A stretch of DNA of 64,000 bases, taken from NCBI RefSeq assembly GCF_964204865.1, contig NC_135259.1, positions 9,238,001 to 9,302,000 of the forward strand, read 5' to 3'. The DNA comes from Styela clava (Eukaryota). Positions 42,419-60,839 of the stretch are shown here, piece by piece (position 1 is the first letter of the stretch; each line of letters opens with the position of its first letter). The position numbers and the translations under genes are program-made. The notes under the pieces are model-generated. The model was given only the letters and a program-made list of their open reading frames with translations. It ran no database searches and was not told where the DNA came from.

Positions 42419-42460
42419 CGAACACGCAATGTGAGGATCGTGTATAATTCAAATACCAAC

Positions 42461-43315
42461 ATGACGAAACAACTTATCAGATCATATGAAGGAAAGGAGC
42501 TCGCGTTGGACTATCTCAAATATCGTCCCTCGTATCCACACCGAATATCAGAAACTATTATGAAATATGTGAGGTCGAACTTGCCGAATAACTCGAACGA
42601 TAAATTGGAGAATATGCTAGATATTGGGTGCGGAAGTGGACAAGCTACTACACTTTTTGCCTCCTATTTCAAGTCCGTAGTGGGAACAGATATTAGTAGT
42701 CAGCAAATTGAAGTAGCAAATGAAAATAACAATCACCAAAATATTGAATATCTGGTGGTAAGTGATGGAAAATTTCCTGTTGAAGACGAAAGCGTAGATT
42801 TTGTGAATTGTGCCACAGCTGCGCATTGGTTAAACATTCCCGAATTTGAGTCCGAGTGCCAAAGAGTTTTGAAACCAAATGGCTCAGTTGCTATTTATGC
42901 CTACTTGCAAAAGCATATAATGGATGCAGATTCAGGCGAGAACTTGAGCCTGGGAGACAAATATCGTGGAGCTGTAATGGAATTTTTTATTACAATCAAG
43001 GCGCACCCCAACAATTTCATATTAGTGCAAAAATATCAGCCGATATTTGAACAAATGGTTAATCCAACAAAAAAATGGATTGAAGACATCACTTTCAACA
43101 AGTACAGTACATTCGAAACTTTTCTCGGATTTTGGGCGACTATTGGGGAATATCAAGCCTTGATGCGAGATGGAAAGCCCAAAGTAGACCCTCTGGAAGA
43201 GCTTAGAAAAAAGTTGAAAGAAGCATGGGGATATGAAAATTGTAAAGACAGCGATATACGTCTAAAAGTGACATATGAAGTATTTATGATAGTGAGCACC
43301 AAAACGCCGAGTTAA
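42461..43315 (+). CDS. Intronless class I SAM-dependent methyltransferase (Methyltransf_11; trans-aconitate methyltransferase/DDB_G0268948-like), 284 aa
   Basis: Long uninterrupted ORF (ATG at 42461 preferred over GTG at 42431); motifs YLKYRPSYP, LDIGCGSGQAT, GTDISSQQI, ESVDFVNCATAAHWL, RVLKPNG. Confidence 0.92.
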   Translation: MTKQLIRSYEGKELALDYLKYRPSYPHRISETIMKYVRSNLPNNSNDKLENMLDIGCGSGQATTLFASYFKSVVGTDISSQQIEVANENNNHQNIEYLVVSDGKFPVEDESVDFVNCATAAHWLNIPEFESECQRVLKPNGSVAIYAYLQKHIMDADSGENLSLGDKYRGAVMEFFITIKAHPNNFILVQKYQPIFEQMVNPTKKWIEDITFNKYSTFETFLGFWATIGEYQALMRDGKPKVDPLEELRKKLKEAWGYENCKDSDIRLKVTYEVFMIVSTKTPS

Positions 43316-48269: not shown

Positions 48270-50530
48270 GCACTAGGAACAGTGGCTATATTTTTATTGC
48301 CTACTTTTTGCTACCGCCCGTGACTCACGTTGGTGTAAATTTGGTTTTAGAGATCTTAAACATCTTTCCGAGCGTACCAGGGATCATCAATCTTCTATGG
48401 AGCATCTGGACAATGCAGTAAAATACCGAACATTCGGAAATGTTAATATTGCAGCACAGTTGGATGAAGGACGCGCGGTTTCTATTCGTCGGCACAACCA
48501 AACGTCGAGAAAAACCGCCATGTTCTAGGTCGATTGATAGATGTTTTGAAGTTCATTGGTTGTCACGAGCTGTCCCTCCGTGGGCACGATGAACGGGCTG
48601 GCTCTTCTAATAGAGGGGTATTTTTGGATATGGTGGAATACACCGCATCCCTAGATACAGTATTGAGAGATCATCTTGACGCCGCAACTGTTTCGAAAGG
48701 GACATCTAAGGATATCCAAAATGATTTGCTCGACTCAATGTATAAAATGTATTTACAACATTTAGCTCTGGAAATTGGGAATTGCCAGTTCCTTTCGATT
48801 CAGTCTGACGAGACAACTGACATCACGTGCGTTTCCCAACTGGCTGTGATTTTTCGGTTTGTGAAAGATGGTAAACCTACCGAGATATTTCACAGCTTTG
48901 TACCAATCGTTGATCGCACGGCTTGCGGGATATCGGCTGTACTGAAAGAAGTGTTAGAGCCTTACAACGCGAAGTCAAAATTGATAGCTCAAACTTATGA
49001 CGGCGCGGCAGTCATGAGTGGGTCGAAACATGATGTTCAAGTTTATATAAAAGAAGATTTACCTTATGCGCATTTTTTACATTGTTATGCACACCAATTT
49101 AACCTCGTTATTAAAAATATGTGTCTTGATACTCTTGATACCCCTCTCGTCCGTATATTTTTTGCAAATGTTTCGGGGTTTTCTTCATTTTTTTTCCGTT
49201 TCGCCGAAGCGCTCTGACCTCCTTTGCCAGATATGTAGCCGCCGTCTCCCAGCTTGTGCACCAACACGTTGGCACTTCCAATCACGCGTGGTGCAGGGCG
49301 TGTCCGAAATTAGGTCTGAGCTCATTGAGTGTTTCAATGGCATTCAGAGCTCTCCGGTTTGGGACGAACGCTCTGTGAGGGAGGCGGTAGGTCTAAAGCG
49401 TCTGCTAGAAGATGGTGAGTTTTCATTTTTTCTCGCGTTTTTCTCCAGAATATTCTATCACGTGGATGTATTATACGGCGCATTGCAGTCAAGGCTATTG
49501 GATGGAGCGTCTGTGCAGTCGTGTATTTCAGACTTCTGCGATGCTGTATCTCGTATCCGGGAAACAATAAAATACGACGACACATGGAGTGCTTCTTTAC
49601 GCCGCGGGCAAACAACGCAGCGTTTGATTTTGTCTGCAAAGGGATGCTGTGACATTCTGGTGAATCAAATAGGCGATCGTCTGCGCACTGAACACCTTGC
49701 CGCGTTCTCTTTGATGAACCCCAAAATTTTTTCAAAATTTGCGTCAATTTCCCATCCATTTGTTGGCTACTGTCTCCAAATTTTACCCCATGATAAACGT
49801 GGGTAAATTGGAAAATGAATTGCGATGTATATACACCAATCAAACTTTTTTGAACATCACATCAACTTGCGCGCTCTATGGGTTCCTCATAGATAACACT
49901 CTAGTAACTACCTTTGCGGCGTCTGCAAAATTTTCAGCACGCTGAAGCGTAAAAAAACGTATCTCAGAAACACAATGAAGCAAGAAAGATTAAATTCCTT
50001 GGCTGTTTTATCCATTCACAGAGACGTTATTTCTGGGATGCATGACTTTAATCAGCGCGTTATTGAGCATTTTGCTTCCAAGAAACCGCGGCGTGTTGCA
50101 TATGTTCAAGCAGTAGAAGTCTAGCAGCATATATATCTATGAGTGAGCGACGCATGTCCTTATCTTTGCATTAACTTTCCTTTCTTCATAGTAACGTTTC
50201 AAACCTTATTTTAGGTTTTGTCTGCTTTCCCGAAGTTTCTGTTGATATGTCATTGTATTTATCTGGGTAAATATTGCCTTTCCTTTTGAAAGAGGTTTCA
50301 AAATAAACTATGTCTATATTCATTAATCCCTTGGCTTGGACCGGTTTCAAAGACACTTTCTTATCGTTAAAAATTGTCGCTTTTGCCGATTGGTTGTTAC
50401 CGATGGAATGGTTTTTATACTCATAAAATGATGGGAGAACGTACAGCGCTCATCCTGTCCCCGTAGATGGGGGTGACTTGGTCCCGCAGTAGCTTGCCCC
50501 GGTTGTCAAAATGACCACGCGCCGCCACTG
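48270..50530 (+). mobile_element. 5'-truncated hAT DNA transposon
   Basis: Contains the transposase relic and ends in cacgcgccgccactg (reverse complement of a cagtggcggc hAT-type TIR) at 50516-50530; no matching left end or TSD found. Confidence 0.75.
48290..50116 (+). pseudogene. Frameshifted hAT transposase (ZMYM1-like / DUF4371 + hATC type)
   Basis: TTF-type zinc-finger relic (CLLF..W...GF.DLKHL....HQSSMEH), LRGHDE, DETTD, YDGAAVMSG, HCYAHQFNL, TRW and LKRKKTYLRNTMKQERLNSLAVLSIH, spread over several frames. Confidence 0.92.
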
Positions 50531-53740: not shown

Positions 53741-54538
53741 CTCCATCCTGCCATCTGATTCCAGGGGTTCGATTAAACCCGGGTCACTGGGTTCAGAAAC
53801 ACTGCTTCAAGTGCTTCCGATACAGCGATAGCAGGATACGGTAGGGAGCCATCATAAATCTGTAAATGGCAGTTTCATGGTACCGTAATCGAATGGCTGA
53901 ATGGGCCCTGCCAGATTGAGTTTTCGTAAGAAGTGAAAAACGTCCCAAGCAAATTAGGTATGCGGTCCTTGTTTTGATATCAAGGCAGATTGAGGAAAAT
54001 AGGAAAATATTTTAAAGAAATAATAATCCCCATATTAATTTCTTTGACAACTTGGACTTGCTGCAGTTCAGCAGTTGCAGATTTAGATAATTCAGTTATT
54101 TTTCACCCCATCTGCTCGTCTTTTTTGCTGTTTTTCATGAACAAATTGTGTTGATCTTTCATGGGAATGTAGATCAATAGATGTTAATGACCACAGAATG
54201 TAATGAAAGGCGAAAGCCTCTTGTTGAAATCGGGATGTAAGGTTCAATCATTTCCACCATAGTTCCGTAGTTCATTGTTTTGTTATAGTCTATCCTATTG
54301 CAGTATTGGATTGTCATAGAATCAGCCTTATTCATTCTCTTTTCACAAGATGGGATTGGTGGGGTACGGTAACTGTTTCATCAGACTGCAAGATAAGAAA
54401 AAAGCATTAACTTAAGTATTTTTCAGAGACTAATACTACAGGACTACAGGTTAAACCAAATGTACTACAGTACTAGTACGACTAACTGTGCCACCCTGTT
54501 CATAGGCAATACTATAATGTGATATAACAAATGTCAAT

Positions 54539-57500
54539 ATGGGGAATGGATCATCAAAATTACCATGGCGTCGGGACAATGCAAAAAAGACCATGAAAGT
54601 CAAAGCTACCCATAGATCCAATAGCATGTCCGGTGCTGTAGATTCAGACAGAAGAGGATCAGGGATGCAAAGAGTATGTATACGTTTATACTCTAGTTTG
54701 GTCTAGTCCTTCCTCCTTTAACTTATCATTCAAGTTTTTTGTATATATCATATATGTGATAATAGAATTACGGTTAAGTATTACTGTTTTACAAATTCAA
54801 TTTAGTTCAATGTTTTATCAGAGCAAAGTTGGCCATGTGTGCAGTTTTTATCAATGCTGACAATTGTGCTTGTCTGAAGAAAGAGTCTAGAATGAACTTT
54901 TATTTCACTATTTTAGCATATACATTAATATATGCAAGTTACATATAATACATTGTTTTTCATTGTTCTTACCAATCTTGCACGCTCCAATCAAATCACA
55001 CAGTACTACAGAGTTTTGGCTTTAGCCAATCGAAAATCTACAAATTTGGATTATGGGGGAATTTCAATGTGAGACTTTAGAACCATTATTAAAGAATTCA
55101 TAAATCAATCATTTTTTTCTATGTTTTGTGAATTTGGCACCATTCTAATATTAGTCAGAAAACTCAGTTTTGCTAGGTTGTAAATATCATCATAAGAATT
55201 GACGTTAGGCATTGAACAAATTTGTAATTGTATTCATCATCTCAAGATTTCAAAAATTTTCACCAATACCATTTTGTTGGGATTCATATATAAATTTCTA
55301 ATCTTTAACTGAGGCCACTTTTATCATTTTATGTCAATAATAATGGATCTATTGCGTAGGTTGTAAAATGTTGTTTACTTTGGAGTATTATGACAACCAG
55401 GTATCTTTTTGTCCAGCCAACTTTTATATGCGTGTGGTTTCATATTCTTTATGGATCAGCAATAAGCCAGCATCAATGTATTTATTGAATATGATCAAAC
55501 CTAAACTTGTTATACAAATATTGGTTCATGATAAATTTCATTTGTTTAAATATGAAAAATCAAGCATGATTACTGATGATTCTTATCGCTAGGAAGTAAT
55601 CTATTTAGGTCCATGTTTGGGAGTTTCATTATTCAACCACCCATTTTTGTTGTCAGTCCCTGTACTTGTACTGCTATGCTAAGTAATTTATATTAATTGA
55701 TGTTTCTATTCTATTCCAAACAGACGTGAAATATCCTATTGTTAGTAGAGGAAATAACCATACACGCCTTATTCAAACTTAATATAAATTTTCTTTTGTT
55801 AAAAGGGGATATTTCACCCATCCGCCGTTTCATCTAATTATTTGTATCTTGCCCTCTTGTATTAAAGGTTGCACACCCCTGGTGCAGCAGGGCACACTAA
55901 TTATATTTTTGTGAATAATATTCCTACTATTATATATTACTGATTGAAGCTTTTTTATCATCATTGTAACTAGCCATAATTTGAGCGATTATTTTCGTTT
56001 CTCATTTCAATTGCACTTATTTACCATGCACAGTGCTGTATTGGCAAATTATTTTATTTATTCTTCATTCTTAGAGGTGACTTGACCAAATTCTATGCTA
56101 CGCTATGATTTTGTGTTGTAATTTCATTTTTTTTTTAAATAATTCTAATATTTGTTTTCAGGCCATGACAGATGGTGCTCTCCAGGTCAATTTTAAAGAG
56201 AGTTCATTTCTTGAATCTGTGGATCAAAAATTGAATGGAATATCATTTGATTTAAAAATAAATGACCTCAATGGTAACGCAATGTCCAATGCAAGCAATA
56301 ATACAGATGGAAGCGGTTTGACTCTCCTCCCTACTGTGCAACGAAAAAATTCTGATATCAAGGTTTCTAAATACAGAGATACAATTTCTGATTTAGAATT
56401 GTACAATCTTATTATTGCTGAAACATGGCAAGGCCACCCTCAGATTCATGATACTGGATACTTGCTCTTGCTAGATTGCAGGTAACTTCCTAATTTAAAT
56501 TATGGTTATAATTAGAGGTAGGCACTTAGTATATTTATCAAAAATTCGTTACGTACATGTTGAGGCGAAAGGCTTTATTAATAGAGTTTATATGACCATT
56601 CGCTCCAGCCGATTTAAATTAAAAACATATTTACCTATCTTTGATTAGAAATTTTATTCGAATTTGTAAATCAATAACCACTAGAAATTAATGACTATTT
56701 TTTGGGGAATATAAATAGATCAGGAAATATTTTCACATTTCGAATATAGCATATAAGACAACTAAAGGTCTTAATTTCCAATCATAATGTTTTCTTTCTA
56801 TTCATCTTATTCTCATGTTGTTGAAAATGTAACCTCTGTACTACATTTCTGTATAGCCTTCCTTTTTATTTTTGACTACTTGTCAAAATAATCTTCTTCA
56901 AATTCATACACTGCCAGATTGAACAATATATCAATGGTAAATTGAAATTTTTGTAGGGAAAAATCTGAGTACGAAGCTGCACATATCATCACGAGTCGCC
57001 ATCATTCAGCTTTGTATTCAGAATATGGACTACTCATGCCAAGTCAACTCAAGCTTTTTCAGATTATTATTTTGTGAGTACATGAGCGACATGCCATCTT
57101 CATTTCACTCATATTTGTACAGGAAATTGATCAATCTAGAAATAAAATGTCAATTTCTGACTGAATATTTTGTATTTTTTTTAATTATACTCAATTAGCA
57201 TGCTGGAATGTTATAAATGAATTAAAACTCTTATAAAAAAAAAAAAATTTTTTGAATGTAAATAGGGTGCAACTAAGTTATTATATTATAAATCATTATT
57301 GTGATTAATTACAACATAACAATAGATTACTAAATAATGTTTTTATAGTTGTTTATTTAACTCGTATTTATCAACTTTGTATGGTATTTGAATTCATTTT
57401 ATTCTATAACTCCATTTTCGATTTTTTTTTGAAGTATTCAACCCTTCTGTATGCATCATACTTTTCAAAGTTTCAATGAAATGTTTTAAAATAATCAGGT

Positions 57501-59292
57501 ACAGCAATTCATCTTTCTGCAAAAATATTCTGGAGATAAGTAAGAAATTATCAGAAGACGAAGTTGAACATTTTCTTCTACAAAGCGGTTCATCACAATT
57601 TTTTGAAAAATATCCATTTTTATCTACTCAAGGACATTATTTAACCAGTGATATGAGAAACACATTACAGGTATATAGGTTTTTATCAAAACAGATAACA
57701 AAACATTCCATAGTCAGATATTTTATCAATTCTTCATTGGTTTATAAACATATTCGAATTCTGTATTGTATTTTCTTTTTCTTTCGATAGTTTTTGTCGC
57801 TGTTTTTAATGATGGCTAATAATATTGAAAATTTGATTCTCCTATATTAAGATATATTCGAGTCTGTATTGTTATTGTTTTGTAACGAATTACCCTTCTG
57901 TTTTAGGCAAATCCATAGTTTCATAATTGTACATATCCCAAATAGTATAGCTCAGGGTGGTCCAAGGTTGCAAGATTGAAGGGCTGTATTGACAAGTACC
58001 GATAACGACCTCTCAAATCGATCACAGGACGTCATTCCCATAGGCCTTGTTTTGACAGTTTCAATTACAACCTTGAAATTTCGTGATTTTAGCAAATATC
58101 ATTCTCGACATTGGTATTAGGAGAAGGGTTTGAATCTCGTAACCCAACTCCAGCACGGGACGTGTTGCGGCCCGCATGCTAGGGTTCGGACCACCTTGGT
58201 ATAGCTGGTAACATGCTGGTTGAGTGAAACATGGTCGTTGCTATATATCTGTAAAATTAAATTTGTACGCTTTGTTTAATAAATACCATTCGGTTCAGAC
58301 CATGCCATCAGAAATTCTACCAGGACGATTATACCAGGGTAATGCAAAACATGCATTGGATTCATACATCATAACATCGCTAGGTAATTATCGAAGTTTT
58401 AATCATGTTACTCTTAATTTTAAAATATCCAAGTGGATCTATTTTGCAGCAGAATTTTGGTAAATAACGAACAATCACAAAATTTAGCATAAATCATGTT
58501 TTACATATAACATTGGTTAATTTCACAGAAGAGAAAAAATATTATCTACCTCAATCTTTTGAAGCTCAGAATAGAACCTATTTTGGTTTTGGTTTTCTGG
58601 ACTTCTCTATTCAGTTTAGTCTAGGTATAAATATTTTTGATCGAAAGTAGGTACTTCATTGAAATAGACCCATTTTTTCATCAAGATCCATGGATATTGA
58701 ATAAGTTGACCAAATGAAAGAATTGAATCAGCTGTAAATCAATGTTTGTATACTAGTTGGCTTCAGAATGAATGCTTGCATTGCCTTCTTTAAATGAGTC
58801 TGTCATATACCTTCTATTTCAGGTATCTCACATATTGTTAATGTCACTCTGGAACATCCAAACAGATTTGAAGATACTGTAAAATACTTGCGGATTCAAC
58901 TTGATGATCGACCTCAAGTTGACCTTCACGCTTGGTTGCCAAGAACCAGTGAATTTGTGCAGTCAGCTATTGGTAGAGTGAGTATTAAAAGTCAAACAAC
59001 TGAAAAACATGAAAATGGAAAAGACTCCGGTGACAATCGAACTCCTGGTGATGTGAGCAGTAAAAAAGAAGTAGTACTTGTTCACTGTAATTTAGGTAGA
59101 AGCCGCAGTTCCACTGTAGTTTTAGGATATCTGATGCAAGCGTGTAGGATGACTCTGAAAGATGCAAGTCGATTACTAAAAGACTGCAGACCAACTGTCC
59201 GCCCTAACATCGGTTTTCTTGAACAGTTACTGCAATATGAAAAAGAGGTGTTTGGTAAAAATGTATCTGATTTGAATGATCTGCCTTTTTAG
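54539..59292 (+). CDS. STYXL1: Rhodanese (CH2) + dual-specificity phosphatase protein, MK-STYX/STYXL1-like but with an intact catalytic motif, ~432 aa, 6 exons
   Basis: Phase-consistent exons 54539-54673, 56162-56481, 56957-57073, 57499-57670, 58299-58383, 58823-59292. Rhodanese part ELYNLI..DTGYLLLLDCREKSEYEAAHIIT..KYPFLSTQ; DSP part PSEILPGRLYQG, ISHIVNVT, IQLDDRP, VLVHCNLGRSRS, GYLM, RPTVRPNIGFLEQLLQYEK. The symbol marks family resemblance; orthology is unproven and exon 1 is the least certain. Confidence 0.88.
57953..58198. mobile_element. hAT-type MITE with perfect 8-bp TSD in a phosphatase intron
   Basis: TIR cagggtggtcc / ggaccaccttg; TSD gtatagct at 57945-57952 and 58199-58206. Confidence 0.9.
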
Positions 59293-60590
59293 GTTATAAG
59301 TACAGTTCATTTATGCTTCTGTTTAAAAACCTTAATAAAATTTCATAACTGAAAAAAAAATTTCCGCTCAAATTTATATAATTTGTACAGCATACGCGCA
59401 TTCTTGGTTTCACCACAAACATTGGTACCACAAAGGCCTTCCTGGTCTCCCTGATATGCTAAATTTTTGTTCTAATCAAAACTGAAAGAAATAACTGGTC
59501 ATTCTTCAGAATTTTGAATCCATAAATCGAAGCTCAAAAATTTCATGTTCAAACTAAGGATTTTAAATAGCAGATACATTGTGTCAAATACTACATAGTT
59601 GGACTTGGACACACTCCATTGTAACAATATTTTTTATACCAATGCATAATGCGCACTCCTTTTTCGGAAGACTAAATTTGACATTGGAAATTTGTATTAT
59701 ACATGGAGAAATACTCATTTTGAATCAGAAATTTTTCACTCATGCATACATAATATGTCCACGTTTTCAACAATTTTTTTTATATTCATATCAGTAGTAT
59801 CACTGTTAGCAATGTTTTTATTTGTTACTGTTTTGTTTTTTTCACTTTAGTTCCATTTGCACATGCAGTAATTTTTTTTTATTCTTCAAAGAATATCACT
59901 TTATATACTTAGTGGACTTACTAGTGATCTTTATATATAGCAATATGTCTGTTGGTACGTTTTTTTATTTCCACCCATAATATCTTGGTCAATTTACATT
60001 TCAAAGTTTCGTCAGTAATGTGTCAACTCTATAAATAGCGTTTTGTTGATACATTCGGTATTTAATTTTAACCAATCCTTTTTCTTTTCCAAAATTTTTT
60101 CCCATCTGGTCTGCAATCTTTCCTTCCATGTTATTTCTTTAATCTGCTTGTGTTCTGTTTTTGGCTCAAGTTGTTTTGTGCAATTATTCAGTAACATAAA
60201 TATTACGTTAGACTCGTGTATGTCATTCCAAAATGCTGAAGCACTAATACTAAATAATCTGATTTTAGACTAGGTTATCACAGTAATCAATTTTTATGTT
60301 AATTTAAATTGCTTGGTGTTAATTTAGATTATGTTTCTAGAAATTGGAAGTAAACTCTAAAATTAAATAGCATGGTAGTACATTTTTAGTACATATGTGA
60401 TGGAAAGATGATAAGATGCCATAATAAAGCAGTAAATAGTACATACAAGTGTTTCTTTGCCAGTATGGATATGACAAAAAAACATTTGTTTCAACTAGCT
60501 ATAATGCAAAATGTACAATTCATGCCAAGTAGATTTAATTATTCAACAGAAAAACACGAAAAATCAGTTCTGGTATTTAAATTAGTATTT

Positions 60591-60839
60591 TTATTGTGAT
60601 TTTGCCGCTTTAAGAAGATCTTTGCCCTTGCTGATAAACCCATCATTGCATGACATATGAAACATCAGTTCAGCTTTAACGAGATTAAAGTTTAGTTTGT
60701 TTTTACTGTTGGTCCAAAGCGCATTCATATTACTAAACACTCTTCCACAATTAGCGTTTGACACTGGAATTGACAGGACAAATGACACAAGACGTAAGAG
60801 TTGTGTATCGCCTGGCTGCCGTGTAAAAAAGAACTTCAC
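60591..60839 (-). pseudogene. hAT transposase C-terminal dimerisation (hATC) relic
   Basis: LVSFVLSIPVSNANCGRVFSNMNALWTNSKNKL matches the hATC consensus LxIPxSNAxxERxFS. Confidence 0.75.

What the first reader, a model, noticed from the sequence alone, without database searches (positions are those of the whole stretch)
54539..59292. MK-STYX/STYXL1-like protein with an intact phosphatase active site
Seen: the spliced product has ELYN, D..YL.LLD.R.K.EY...H.IT, Y.FL.TQ, P.EI.PG and a C-terminal QLL..EK...G, and its signature loop reads VLVHCNLGRSRS (59074-59109) with an acidic D-loop (IQLDDRP). Established: vertebrate MK-STYX has this rhodanese+DSP layout but is a pseudophosphatase (FSTQGISRS in place of HCxxGxSRS); active MKPs carry a basic KIM cluster in the rhodanese domain, which I do not see here. 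Inference: this is a catalytically competent member of the STYXL1 lineage, useful for working out what the pseudoenzyme's ancestor dephosphorylated. The motif comparison is from memory, not from an alignment run.
Basis: partly seen in the sequence, partly recalled or inferred. Interest (0 to 1): 0.75.

Follow-up and report, generated by a model that had tools for sequence, protein, structure and literature searches.

The report
Sea-squirt STYXL1 gene, active site intact
This is the sea-squirt version of STYXL1, a cilia and sperm-tail protein that is a dead phosphatase in mammals; here, as in nearly all non-mammalian relatives sampled, it keeps every residue an active phosphatase needs.

Summary
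Window 54539-59292 (+) is a six-exon gene. Assembled contigs of three runs from three studies carry all five GT..AG joints, including the exon with VLVHCNLGRSRS. The exon products lie in order on a rhodanese-like plus dual-specificity-phosphatase family profile.

That family runs from choanoflagellates to ray-finned fish, and NCBI names several members STYXL1. Of 46 aligned members, 45 keep HCxxGxxR[S/T]. An invertebrate-only profile hits mammalian STYXL1 best among solved structures, both full-length (207 bits against 157) and with the rhodanese part alone (59 against 46). A model of the Ciona orthologue superposes on axonemal STYXL1 at TM 0.82-0.83. A two-domain tree puts the window's exon 6 on the family side at 97/98.

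Limits:
- AU tests do not quite reject an MKP grouping (p 0.052 and 0.080).
- No tetrapod STYXL1 could be put in a tree.
- Activity is only inferred.

The gene has no KIM, whereas the same genome's canonical MKP has one.

Verdict: a real, expressed STYXL1-lineage gene that is probably catalytically active. An intact site is the rule outside mammals, so this is a new member of a known kind. Its likely setting is radial spoke 3 of cilia; that is inference.

The parts
54381..54673 (+). Exon 1: 5' UTR (contigs reach back to at least 54381) and the start of the reading frame at 54539, MGNGSSK... (45 codons), a consensus-like N-myristoylation start (Gly2, Ser6, Lys7)
   Evidence: Joint 54673|56162 in X1, X3 and X6; in-frame stop nine codons before the ATG; 31 of 46 family members start MG and 30 have S/T at residue 6
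56162..56481 (+). Exon 2: low-complexity linker, then the start of the rhodanese-like domain with ELYN (56396-56407) and YLLLLDC
   Evidence: Joints; matches family profile positions 107-146; own-genome six-frame hit to the rhodanese-only profile at E 0.06
56957..57073 (+). Exon 3: rhodanese-like domain, EKSEYEAAHIITS...; no basic KIM cluster
   Evidence: Joints; profile positions 148-183; own-genome hit to the rhodanese-only profile at E 2.5e-4; KIM control
57499..57670 (+). Exon 4: end of the rhodanese-like domain (FFEKYPFLSTQ) and the inter-domain linker
   Evidence: Joints; profile positions 196-242
58299..58383 (+). Exon 5: first strands of the phosphatase domain (MPSEILPGRLYQG...)
   Evidence: Joints 57670|58299 (X1, X3, X6) and 58383|58823 (X3, X6); profile positions 248-274
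58823..59292 (+). Exon 6, coding part: the rest of the DSP domain and the family-typical C-terminal tail ending DLPF; stop at 59290-59292; the 3' UTR runs on to at least 59700
   Evidence: Pfam DSPc E 2.7e-26; profile positions 276-400, 175 bits; contigs X3 and X6 reach 59700
58894..58914 (+). D-loop IQLDDRP; the second Asp (58906-58908) aligns with the invariant general-acid column
   Evidence: Alignment; invariant D
59074..59109 (+). P-loop VLVHCNLGRSRS; nucleophile Cys codon TGT at 59086-59088
   Evidence: invariant H, C, G, R columns; no variant listed here in four runs
58981..59067 (+). 29-residue hydrophilic insertion between the helix and the strand that lead into the P-loop; Ciona has a shorter one, modelled at low confidence
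   Evidence: Gap in the profile alignment; the pLDDT 64 block in the Ciona model

Best explanation
The gene is the single tunicate member (pro-orthologue) of the STYXL1 / MK-STYX lineage. It is a 432-codon, six-exon, transcribed gene. Its product has three parts: a probably N-myristoylated, disordered N-terminal stretch; a non-catalytic rhodanese-like (CH2) domain without a MAP-kinase docking motif; and a C-terminal dual-specificity phosphatase domain with a complete cysteine-based catalytic set (general-acid Asp, HCxxGxSRS).

Shown: gene structure, transcription, domain order, intact motifs, family membership.

Inferred:
- It is an active phosphatase working by the usual two-step thiol-phosphate mechanism.
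- It sits on radial spoke 3 of motile cilia and sperm flagella, like mammalian STYXL1, which the papers read here describe as a stalk protein of that spoke bound to CFAP91 and MORN5.
- It would therefore act there as a resident phosphatase, whereas the mammalian protein keeps only the scaffold role.

Its substrate is unknown. Classical KIM-mediated MAPK docking is unlikely.
For: - Splicing and expression: all five GT..AG joints in contigs of runs from three studies.
- Domains: DSPc at E 2.7e-26; exon products lie in order on the family profile; orthologues pass Pfam's Rhodanese and DSPc cut-offs.
- Family: the nearest full-length protein is Ciona intestinalis P0002, 59% identical over exon 6. 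Named members run from choanoflagellates, sponge, cnidarians, bryozoans, annelid, brachiopod, rotifer, urchin, hemichordate and amphioxus to ray-finned fish.
- Link to STYXL1, by sequence: the invertebrate-only profile scores 207.0 and 205.4 bits on bovine and mouse STYXL1 over almost the whole chains, against 157 for the best DSP-only chain. The rhodanese-only profile scores 59.2 and 58.0 bits on STYXL1 against 46.4 (DUSP10), 42.8 (DUSP16) and 42.5 (DUSP6), and only the STYXL1 alignment takes in the ELYN helix. Sturgeon 'STYXL1' has mammalian STYXL1 as its best solved hit.
- Link to STYXL1, by fold: the AlphaFold model of the Ciona orthologue (pLDDT 76.5; residues 1-80 disordered) is best matched by 9fqr_Xs and 9d2f_H at TM 0.82 and 0.83 over about 300 columns.
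- Trees: with the DSP domain alone, tunicates plus family form a clade at 83/94. With two domains, 41 family rows including the window's exon 6 separate from 8 outside rows at 97/98, in 97% of 200 bootstrap trees.
- Single copy: the window locus is the best own-genome match to the family profile and the only match to the rhodanese profile.
- Catalytic set; 45 of 46 aligned members keep the loop.
- No KIM here, while the same genome's MKP has one.
- Radial-spoke role of STYXL1: passages read in PMC11779644 and bioRxiv 10.1101/2025.05.19.654877. Knockout phenotype and CCT binding: PMC10761714.
Against: - Exon 6 alone scores higher with DUSP21, DUSP18 and DUSP14 (71-66 bits) than with STYXL1 (44 bits).
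- The Ciona protein alone has DUSP16 on top (72.5 bits against 63.0).
- The exon 2 product alone finds nothing real among solved structures, and exons 1-5 give no Pfam hit singly.
- AU tests do not formally reject tunicates grouped with the MKP-like rows: p 0.080 on the DSP domain and p 0.052 on two domains.
- In a quick two-domain tree the tunicates joined one long unnamed row, P0029, at 98. I dropped that row before the careful tree.
- Only one outside row carries an MKP name (oyster DUSP4).
- No tetrapod STYXL1 was in any tree. Intron positions and synteny could not be compared.
- The tunicate rows have changes at family positions: M for the near-invariant W, SG for GG, and a 29-residue insert next to the P-loop.
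- No activity, localisation or tissue data exist for this gene.
- A Tetrahymena study found no STYXL1 orthologue, so the spoke role is not universal.
Confidence: 0.7

Rival explanations
1. It belongs to the STYXL1 lineage but works, like mammalian STYXL1, only as a scaffold or binding protein. The intact motif would be retained without meaningful turnover, for example because the tunicate-specific insert or other changes block the pocket, or because it only traps substrates.
For: The known functions of STYXL1 need no catalysis, and CCT binding is through the non-phosphatase region. STYXL1 is described as a structural stalk protein of radial spoke 3. The window gene has a 29-residue insert beside the P-loop and tunicate-specific substitutions.
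Against: The H, C, G and R of the loop and the Asp are invariant across 46 members (45 of 46 match the full HCxxGxxR[S/T] pattern) spanning choanoflagellates to fish. That is hard to explain without selection on chemistry. The insert lies in a loop that is disordered in the Ciona model.
Confidence: 0.17
2. It belongs to an old rhodanese+DSP family that is not the ancestor of tetrapod STYXL1. The fish and invertebrate 'STYXL1' names would be annotation carry-over, and the tetrapod gene would have arisen from an MKP.
For: NCBI's names for family members disagree: DUSP16, DUSP16-like, DUSP2-like, DUSP5, 'MAP kinase phosphatase with leucine-rich repeats', 'probable rhodanese domain-containing...', and STYXL1. 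No tetrapod sequence was in my trees. No synteny or intron test was possible.
Against: Both the whole profile and the rhodanese-only profile, built without any vertebrate, rank mammalian STYXL1 first. The N-terminal ELYN helix and the C-terminal tail (..G..xTDI..) align only with STYXL1. The two-domain fold superposes at TM 0.82-0.83.
Confidence: 0.08
3. It is a canonical MAP-kinase phosphatase (the Ciona orthologue carries the name DUSP16) that dephosphorylates MAPKs.
For: It has the same rhodanese+DSP layout. The Ciona protein's best single-sequence solved hit is the DUSP16 catalytic domain. AU tests are borderline (p 0.052 and 0.080).
Against: There is no KIM, whereas the genome's own MKP has LMLRRLKANKLPL. 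That MKP's DSP domain is split by an intron near Pfam position 68, while the window gene's runs unbroken from about position 25. MKP rhodanese domains score 13-17 bits below STYXL1 with the family's rhodanese profile. The 97/98 split separates the family from the MKP-like rows.
Confidence: 0.05

Closest known systems
Mammalian STYXL1 / MK-STYX (solved chains 9fqr_Xs, bovine sperm 96-nm axonemal repeat; 9d2f_H, mouse respiratory-cilia radial spoke 3)
   Same: Rhodanese-like domain plus a DSP domain that ends at the C-terminus. Shared ELYNxLN helix at the start of the rhodanese domain, no KIM, a shared C-terminal tail, and a retained D-loop Asp. It is the best solved match of the family profile and of the Ciona model.
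   Different: The mammalian loop reads F-S where this gene reads H-C (alignments). The mammalian chains start about 10 residues before ELYN and so lack the roughly 120-residue N-terminal stretch with the MG start. This gene has a 29-residue insert before the P-loop.
Non-tetrapod family members annotated as 'STYXL1' or 'probable rhodanese domain-containing dual specificity protein phosphatase' (Ciona P0002, amphioxus P0010, urchin P0076, sturgeon P0209 and others)
   Same: Same layout, MG start, intact HCxxGxSRS, and 66-75 residues from the Cys to the C-terminus (67 here). Tunicates and ray-finned fish share G-R-S-R-S in the loop.
   Different: The window protein and Ciona are long branches. 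They have SG or nothing in place of the GG(F/Y) motif, M or W at the near-invariant Trp, and extra loop residues.
Canonical MAP-kinase phosphatases (DUSP1/4/6/10/16; own-genome example at G000:C10:15439370-15447876)
   Same: Rhodanese-like CH2 domain followed by an active DSP domain; similar DSP scores.
   Different: MKPs carry a KIM (LMLRRLKANKLPL in the own-genome MKP), lack the ELYN helix (their alignments start at profile position 22-25), have C-terminal extensions beyond the DSP domain, and place an intron differently within the DSP domain.
Atypical DUSP14 / DUSP18 / DUSP21
   Same: These are the best single-sequence solved hits of exon 6 (71-66 bits). Their similarity extends into the tail (..lFgkN..). 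DUSP21 is also modelled in the sperm doublet-microtubule entries 8otz and 8iyj.
   Different: They have no rhodanese domain and fall in a separate, well-supported clade (100/99) in the DSP tree.

Membership tests
STYXL1 / MK-STYX lineage | N-terminal rhodanese-like (CH2) domain followed by a DSP domain that ends the protein | tested here: met
   Exon products lie in order on the family profile. DSPc hit. There are 67 residues from the Cys to the stop, against 66-75 in 45 family rows. Orthologues pass Pfam's Rhodanese and DSPc cut-offs.
STYXL1 / MK-STYX lineage | Closer to STYXL1 than to any other DUSP (family profile against solved chains) | tested here: met
   The invertebrate-only profile scores 207.0 and 205.4 bits on STYXL1 against 157 for the next chain. 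Rhodanese-only: 59.2 and 58.0 against 46.4.
STYXL1 / MK-STYX lineage | Closer to STYXL1 than to any other DUSP (the window's own pieces, singly) | tested here: not met
   Exon 6 scores 71.4 bits on DUSP21, 67.9 on DUSP18, 65.7 on DUSP14 and 44.4 on STYXL1. Exon 2 gives no real hit. This is expected if the mammalian protein has drifted, but the single-sequence test fails.
STYXL1 / MK-STYX lineage | Groups in a tree with proteins named STYXL1, apart from MKPs and atypical DUSPs | tested here: inconclusive
   83/94 on the DSP domain and 97/98 on two domains, with fish, amphioxus and urchin 'STYXL1'. But AU p is 0.080 and 0.052 for the MKP grouping, one long row was dropped, and no tetrapod STYXL1 was in the trees.
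STYXL1 / MK-STYX lineage | Two-domain fold and domain packing as in solved STYXL1 | tested here: met
   Tested on the Ciona orthologue, not on the window protein: TM (target-normalised) 0.82 and 0.83, rmsd 3.5 over 313 and 295 columns. The next hits cover the DSP domain only.
STYXL1 / MK-STYX lineage | Pseudophosphatase signature (F-S in place of H-C), which defines the mammalian protein as 'MK-STYX' | tested here: not met
   The loop here reads VLVHCNLGRSRS. The mammalian chains read ..VFST.GISRS in the alignments. This is a feature of the mammalian state, not of descent.
STYXL1 / MK-STYX lineage | Shared intron positions or neighbouring genes with vertebrate STYXL1 | not testable with these tools
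The window's neighbours are a methyltransferase and transposon remnants.
STYXL1 / MK-STYX lineage | Radial-spoke-3 stalk location, binding CFAP91 and MORN5 | not testable with these tools
   Known for mouse and bovine only. No localisation data exist for tunicates. A Ciona cilia/sperm proteomics paper has no 'phosphatase' in its main text, and its supplements are closed.
Canonical MAP-kinase phosphatases | Kinase-interaction motif (cluster of Arg) in the rhodanese domain | tested here: not met
   The window reads ...HIITSRHHSALYSEYGLL... at the place where the own-genome MKP reads ...LMLRRLKANKLPL.... Only 5 of 46 family rows have any RR in that span.
Active cysteine-based dual-specificity phosphatases | HCxxGxxR(S/T) P-loop and a general-acid Asp about 30 residues upstream (about 60 here because of the insert) | tested here: met
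   these are invariant columns.
Active cysteine-based dual-specificity phosphatases | Measured Cys-dependent phosphatase activity | not testable with these tools
   This needs a bench assay.
Atypical DUSP14/18/21 | DSP domain alone, no N-terminal rhodanese domain | tested here: not met
   Exons 2-4 encode a rhodanese-like domain. These proteins form a separate clade.

The most novel reading that the evidence does not exclude
Outside tetrapods, STYXL1 is a working, N-myristoylated phosphatase built into radial spoke 3 of motile cilia and sperm flagella. It would be an axoneme-resident dual-specificity phosphatase placed beside the spoke's AKAP14/PKA module. The mammalian pseudophosphatase would then be a stripped-down remnant that lost its His-Cys pair and its myristoylated N-terminal stretch and kept only the scaffold role. 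The tunicate gene, and its fish, urchin and amphioxus orthologues, would be the way to find what that phosphatase acts on.
Probability: 0.3. Interest if true: 0.65.

Novelty: new member of a known kind. Interest (0 to 1): 0.4.

Why it matters
STYXL1 is studied almost only as a 'dead' enzyme. The one dedicated evolutionary study I read (PMC8907265: outline, one section and searched passages) covers 347 vertebrate species down to ray-finned fish. In the passages I saw, it does not mention that the fish proteins keep the catalytic His-Cys pair.

Papers from 2025 place mammalian STYXL1 in radial spoke 3. Together this turns 'what did the ancestor dephosphorylate?' into a concrete question about phospho-regulation inside the axoneme, answerable in tractable animals with external sperm (sea squirt, urchin, zebrafish).

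The gene itself is ordinary for its family. The value lies in the family-wide pattern.

Tried and rejected
Getting tetrapod STYXL1 as a stored protein failed three times.
- The search with anchovy STYXL1 returned only fish, amphioxus and distant proteins.
- The search with alignment A1 was cut to 8000 candidates and returned family members and other DUSPs.
- The search with the rhodanese region of P0042 returned only the query.

As a result no tree holds a tetrapod sequence.

Other steps that led nowhere, and results that weaken the reading:
- Single-exon Pfam scans of exons 1-5 gave nothing.
- Exon 2 against solved chains gave only a chance hit at E 1.4.
- The DSP-only trees resolve the family only moderately.
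- Forcing tunicates together with the MKP-like rows was not formally rejected.
- I had labelled five rows 'MKP-like' by layout alone. One of them, P0029, has a rhodanese domain plus two DSP domains, no KIM-like Arg pair, and DUSP19/15/22 as its best solved hits. It joined the tunicates in a quick tree and was dropped.

Rows dropped:
- One search left out 14 of 168 proteins whose DSP match covered fewer than 100 profile positions.
- One search used 90 hand-picked rows of those 155, plus two own-genome frames.
- Searches used 49, then 48, hand-picked proteins plus exon 6.

Neighbouring genes gave no synteny clue. Rfam found nothing in the repeat-bearing introns.

Literature:
- Searches found no open paper that discusses catalytically intact STYXL1 orthologues. 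The phrase 'rhodanese domain-containing dual specificity' occurs in none.
- Chen, Dixon and Manning 2017 (Sci Signal) is not held.
- The supplements that could bear on this are closed and unseen: Supplementary Fig. 1A of PMC10761714 ('conserved from elegans to humans') and Supplementary Table 6 of PMC11779644.

Here I showed only that the nearest relative is Ciona.

Full report
WHAT IS THERE.

The window is A+T-rich eukaryotic DNA with 0.29-0.42 G+C. It lies at G000:C13:9238001-9302000 of a 377-Mb assembly. I showed only that the nearest relatives of this gene are ascidian.

VLVHCNLGRSRS sits exactly at 59074-59109. Exon 6 alone is a Pfam DSPc match at E 2.7e-26, 92.4 bits against a cut-off of 33.5.

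IS THE SPLICED MODEL REAL?

I laid contigs of four public runs on 54300-59700.
- Runs X1, X3 and X6 come from three studies. The tool guesses they are RNA, and the spliced contigs show it. They carry the joints 54673|56162, 56481|56957, 57073|57499 and 57670|58299; X3 and X6 also carry 58383|58823. All have GT..AG ends.
- Single contigs of 2303 and 1835 letters run from the 5' UTR (54381 or 54436) through all exons to beyond 59700.
- Run X10 covers the introns evenly and shows no joint, so it serves as the DNA control.
- No variant is listed inside the P-loop codons. An in-frame 3-base deletion allele at 56324 is seen in X3 and X6.

The exon lengths add up to 1299 nt, which is 432 codons plus the stop. 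The ATG at 54539 is preceded by an in-frame stop nine codons upstream within the transcribed first exon, so the MGNGSSK start is sound.

WHAT FAMILY IS IT?

A full HMMER pass of exon 6 over 1.84 billion representatives gave 14037 proteins at E up to 0.001, and 4 at E up to 1e-30.
- The best full-length hit is P0002 (59% identity, 374 aa), a Ciona intestinalis protein. NCBI calls it variously DUSP16, 'MAP kinase phosphatase with leucine-rich repeats protein 1' or 'probable rhodanese domain-containing dual specificity protein phosphatase'.
- Below it come many proteins of 290-520 residues that share one plan: often an MG start, a variable stretch, ELYN-type helix, YxLLxDxR..Y..HIxTA, GGFxxF..YPFLCT, YPSxIL..LYxG, ITHIVN, a D-loop, VLVHCxxGxSRS, PNxGFxxQL, and a tail ending about 67 residues after the Cys.
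- Named members are: choanoflagellates (Hartaetosiga), a sponge (Oscarella), cnidarians (Nematostella, Clytia, Hydractinia), bryozoans, an annelid (Owenia), a brachiopod (Lingula), a rotifer, a sea urchin (Lytechinus), a hemichordate (Glandiceps), amphioxus, and many ray-finned fish including gar, bowfin and sturgeon.

The window's exon products match the invertebrate-only profile A2 in order: exon 2 at positions 107-146, exon 3 at 148-183, exon 4 at 196-242, exon 5 at 248-274 and exon 6 at 276-400.

In the window's own genome the locus is the best match to A2 (174.7 bits) and the only match to the rhodanese-only profile A3. The other DSP loci I opened look like DUSP19, DUSP12 and PTPMT1 by their motifs (by eye, not tested further), and one is a canonical MKP.

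IS THE FAMILY THE STYXL1 LINEAGE?

I could not obtain a tetrapod STYXL1 as a stored protein. The link to the mammalian protein therefore rests on solved structures.

1. Profile A2 (27 invertebrate sequences, no vertebrate) scores 207.0 and 205.4 bits on bovine and mouse STYXL1. The alignment runs from profile position 117 to 398-399 and from residue 7 to the end of the chains. The best other chain, a DUSP1 catalytic-domain fusion, scores 157.0. That comparison favours two-domain chains, so I made a second test.
2. A rhodanese-only profile (A3, 17 invertebrate stretches) again ranks STYXL1 first at 59.2 and 58.0 bits. The MKP rhodanese domains score 46.4 and 45.9 (DUSP10), 42.8 (DUSP16) and 42.5 (DUSP6), and CEP41 scores 35.5. 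Only the STYXL1 alignment starts at position 3 and includes the ELYN helix.
3. Sturgeon 'STYXL1' has mammalian STYXL1 as best solved hits at 102.6 and 102.2 bits, against 89.0 for DUSP5.
4. An AlphaFold2 model of the Ciona orthologue has mean pLDDT 76.5, with residues 1-80 disordered and the two domains mostly above 90. Foldseek matches it best to 9fqr_Xs (bovine sperm 96-nm axonemal repeat) and 9d2f_H (mouse radial spoke 3), at target-normalised TM 0.82 and 0.83 over 313 and 295 columns. All further hits cover the DSP domain only.

Results that point the other way:
- Exon 6 on its own prefers DUSP21, DUSP18 and DUSP14 (71.4, 67.9 and 65.7 bits) to STYXL1 (44.4).
- Ciona alone has DUSP16 on top at 72.5 bits against 63.0.
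- Exon 2 alone finds nothing.

The mammalian protein is reported to be fast-evolving (PMC8907265 abstract). Single-sequence ranks are therefore poor guides here, but the failure is recorded.

TREES.

On the DSP domain (92 rows, 161 columns, careful search):
- The window's exon 6 joins P0003 and Ciona at 99/80, then P0038 at 93/91.
- This group is sister to the main family, and the two together form a clade at 83/94.
- The oyster DUSP4 row, the DUSP14 clade (100/99), the DUSP19 clade (with the own-genome L001 frame) and the Slingshot rows lie outside.
- The tool warned that the bootstrap had not settled.

With both domains (49 rows, 298 columns; exon 6 fills 42% of them):
- 41 family rows including exon 6 are split from 8 outside rows at 97/98, in 97% of 200 bootstrap trees.
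- Rooted on the outside rows, the order is choanoflagellates and sponge, then cnidarian-containing groups, then bilaterians. Amphioxus, ambulacrarians and fish fall together (80/96) and the tunicates lie nearby without support. This is broadly species-like, as expected of a single-copy gene.

Caveats:
- AU tests of 'tunicates plus the MKP-like rows' give p 0.080 (log-likelihood 42.3 lower) and p 0.052 (15.9 lower). The rival is disfavoured but not formally rejected.
- The long row P0029 joined the tunicates at 98 in a quick tree and was removed. It has a rhodanese domain plus two DSP domains and is not an evident MKP.
- Only one outside row carries an MKP name.

ACTIVE SITE AND KIM.

In alignments of 26, 27 and 46 family members, the His, Cys, Gly and Arg of the loop, the D-loop Asp, and the PN..F..QL..E motif are invariant columns.
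- 45 of 46 members match HCxxGxxR[S/T]. The remaining one has Gly after the Arg.
- Of 69 fish entries, 66 have the loop. The three without it are truncated or mis-joined models that lack the region, not substitutions.
- The window gene has all of these. Its second Asp of LDD (58906-58908) aligns with the invariant Asp, and its Cys codon is 59086-59088.
- The mammalian chains read F-S at the His-Cys place while keeping the Asp and the GISRS (alignments). This agrees with PMC8907265 (introduction passage).

The same genome's MKP on contig C10 reads LLLDCRGNEEYRSGHIKGAYNIILPQLMLRRLKANKLPL, while the window gene reads LLLDC(R)EKSEYEAAHIITSRHHSALYSEYGLL at the same place. That MKP also has an intron inside the DSP domain near Pfam position 68, which the window gene lacks.

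Tunicate peculiarities are a 29-residue hydrophilic insert before the P-loop strand (58981-59067), SG in place of the GG(F/Y) motif, and Met at the near-invariant Trp.

N-TERMINUS.

31 of 46 aligned members start MG, and 30 of those have Ser or Thr at residue 6. The window gene reads MGNGSSK. From established knowledge of N-myristoyltransferase preference (Gly2, small residue 3, Ser/Thr6, basic 7-8), this predicts N-myristoylation. I recall the rule; no predictor was run.

The mammalian chains begin about ten residues before ELYN. They therefore lack this stretch as well as the His-Cys pair.

HOW IT MOST LIKELY WORKS.

Shown: a transcribed gene for a rhodanese-like plus DSP protein of the STYXL1 family with a complete catalytic set.

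Inferred from the DSP fold and its invariant residues: hydrolysis of phospho-Tyr and/or phospho-Ser/Thr through a Cys-phosphate intermediate, with Asp as general acid.

Inferred from what is published on mammalian STYXL1:
- In mouse it lines the proximal stalk with MORN5 on CFAP91 residues 580-620, near AKAP14 and the PKA regulatory subunit (bioRxiv 10.1101/2025.05.19.654877, passages).
- Knockout mice are male-infertile with flagellar defects, and the protein binds the CCT chaperonin through its non-phosphatase region (PMC10761714, passages).

All named members of the family come from organisms with motile cilia or flagella (my own knowledge of those taxa). I therefore consider an axonemal, spoke-3-resident phosphatase the most likely role. 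This step is inference only. A Tetrahymena study found no STYXL1 orthologue (PMC12399478).

NOVELTY AND VERDICT.

The gene is a normal member of a family already present in public annotation, under inconsistent names. What seems under-appreciated in the open literature I could search is that the intact catalytic site is the rule for STYXL1 orthologues outside mammals. The vertebrate-wide study PMC8907265 includes ray-finned fish, yet the passages returned for 'fish', 'cysteine' and 'active site' do not mention it. The phosphatome paper of Chen, Dixon and Manning could not be read and may already say so.

I file the finding as a new member of a known kind, with moderate interest. That interest comes mainly from the link to radial spoke 3.

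Noticed in passing
window 55838-55882 and 57953-57984 (introns 1 and 4 of the gene): There are two short high-copy repeats. Summed contig depth is about 200-800 at the first in all four runs, and 69 at the second in the DNA-like run, with many loose ends on both sides. No Rfam family reaches gathering score in 55600-58300.
   Followed up: partly
window 56324: An in-frame 3-base deletion allele in the low-complexity part of exon 2 is seen in the contigs of X3 and X6 but not in X1 or X10. Many further single-base differences lie between the runs and the assembly.
   Followed up: no
window 42431-43315 (+): An unbroken 294-codon frame encodes a class I SAM-dependent methyltransferase (Methyltransf_11, E 6.6e-22). 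It looks like an intronless gene upstream of the phosphatase gene.
   Followed up: partly
window 48534-49806 (+) and 60591-60839 (-): These are remnants of hAT-type transposons: DUF4371 (E 8.6e-16) inside the G+C-richer block at 48-54 kb, and a hAT dimerisation region (E 3.2e-5) downstream of the gene.
   Followed up: partly
G000:C10:15439370-15447876 (locus L004, - strand): This is the genome's canonical MAP-kinase phosphatase, with a textbook KIM (LMLRRLKANKLPL), a long Ser/Pro-rich linker, and a DSP domain split by an intron before the P-loop exon.
   Followed up: partly
proteins P0050 and P0096 (one search list): These are family members with a full family-type rhodanese domain (113-114 bits against profile A3) and an extra C-terminal extension of about 220-245 residues after the DSP domain. 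They are nested inside the family in all trees. Their source organism is unknown.
   Followed up: no
public annotation of family members: One orthologous family carries at least seven different NCBI product names (DUSP16, DUSP16-like, DUSP2-like, DUSP5, 'MAP kinase phosphatase with leucine-rich repeats protein 1', 'probable rhodanese domain-containing dual specificity protein phosphatase', STYXL1). One Lytechinus pictus accession carries STYXL1 in version .1 and the rhodanese name in version .2.
   Followed up: no
solved structures 8otz, 8i7o/8iyj and 9fqr: The best single-sequence relatives of exon 6 include DUSP21 (with DUSP18 and DUSP14). DUSP21 chains are modelled in the sperm doublet-microtubule entries 8otz and 8iyj, and STYXL1 in the axonemal entry 9fqr. 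At least two DSP-fold proteins therefore sit in mammalian sperm axonemes.
   Followed up: no
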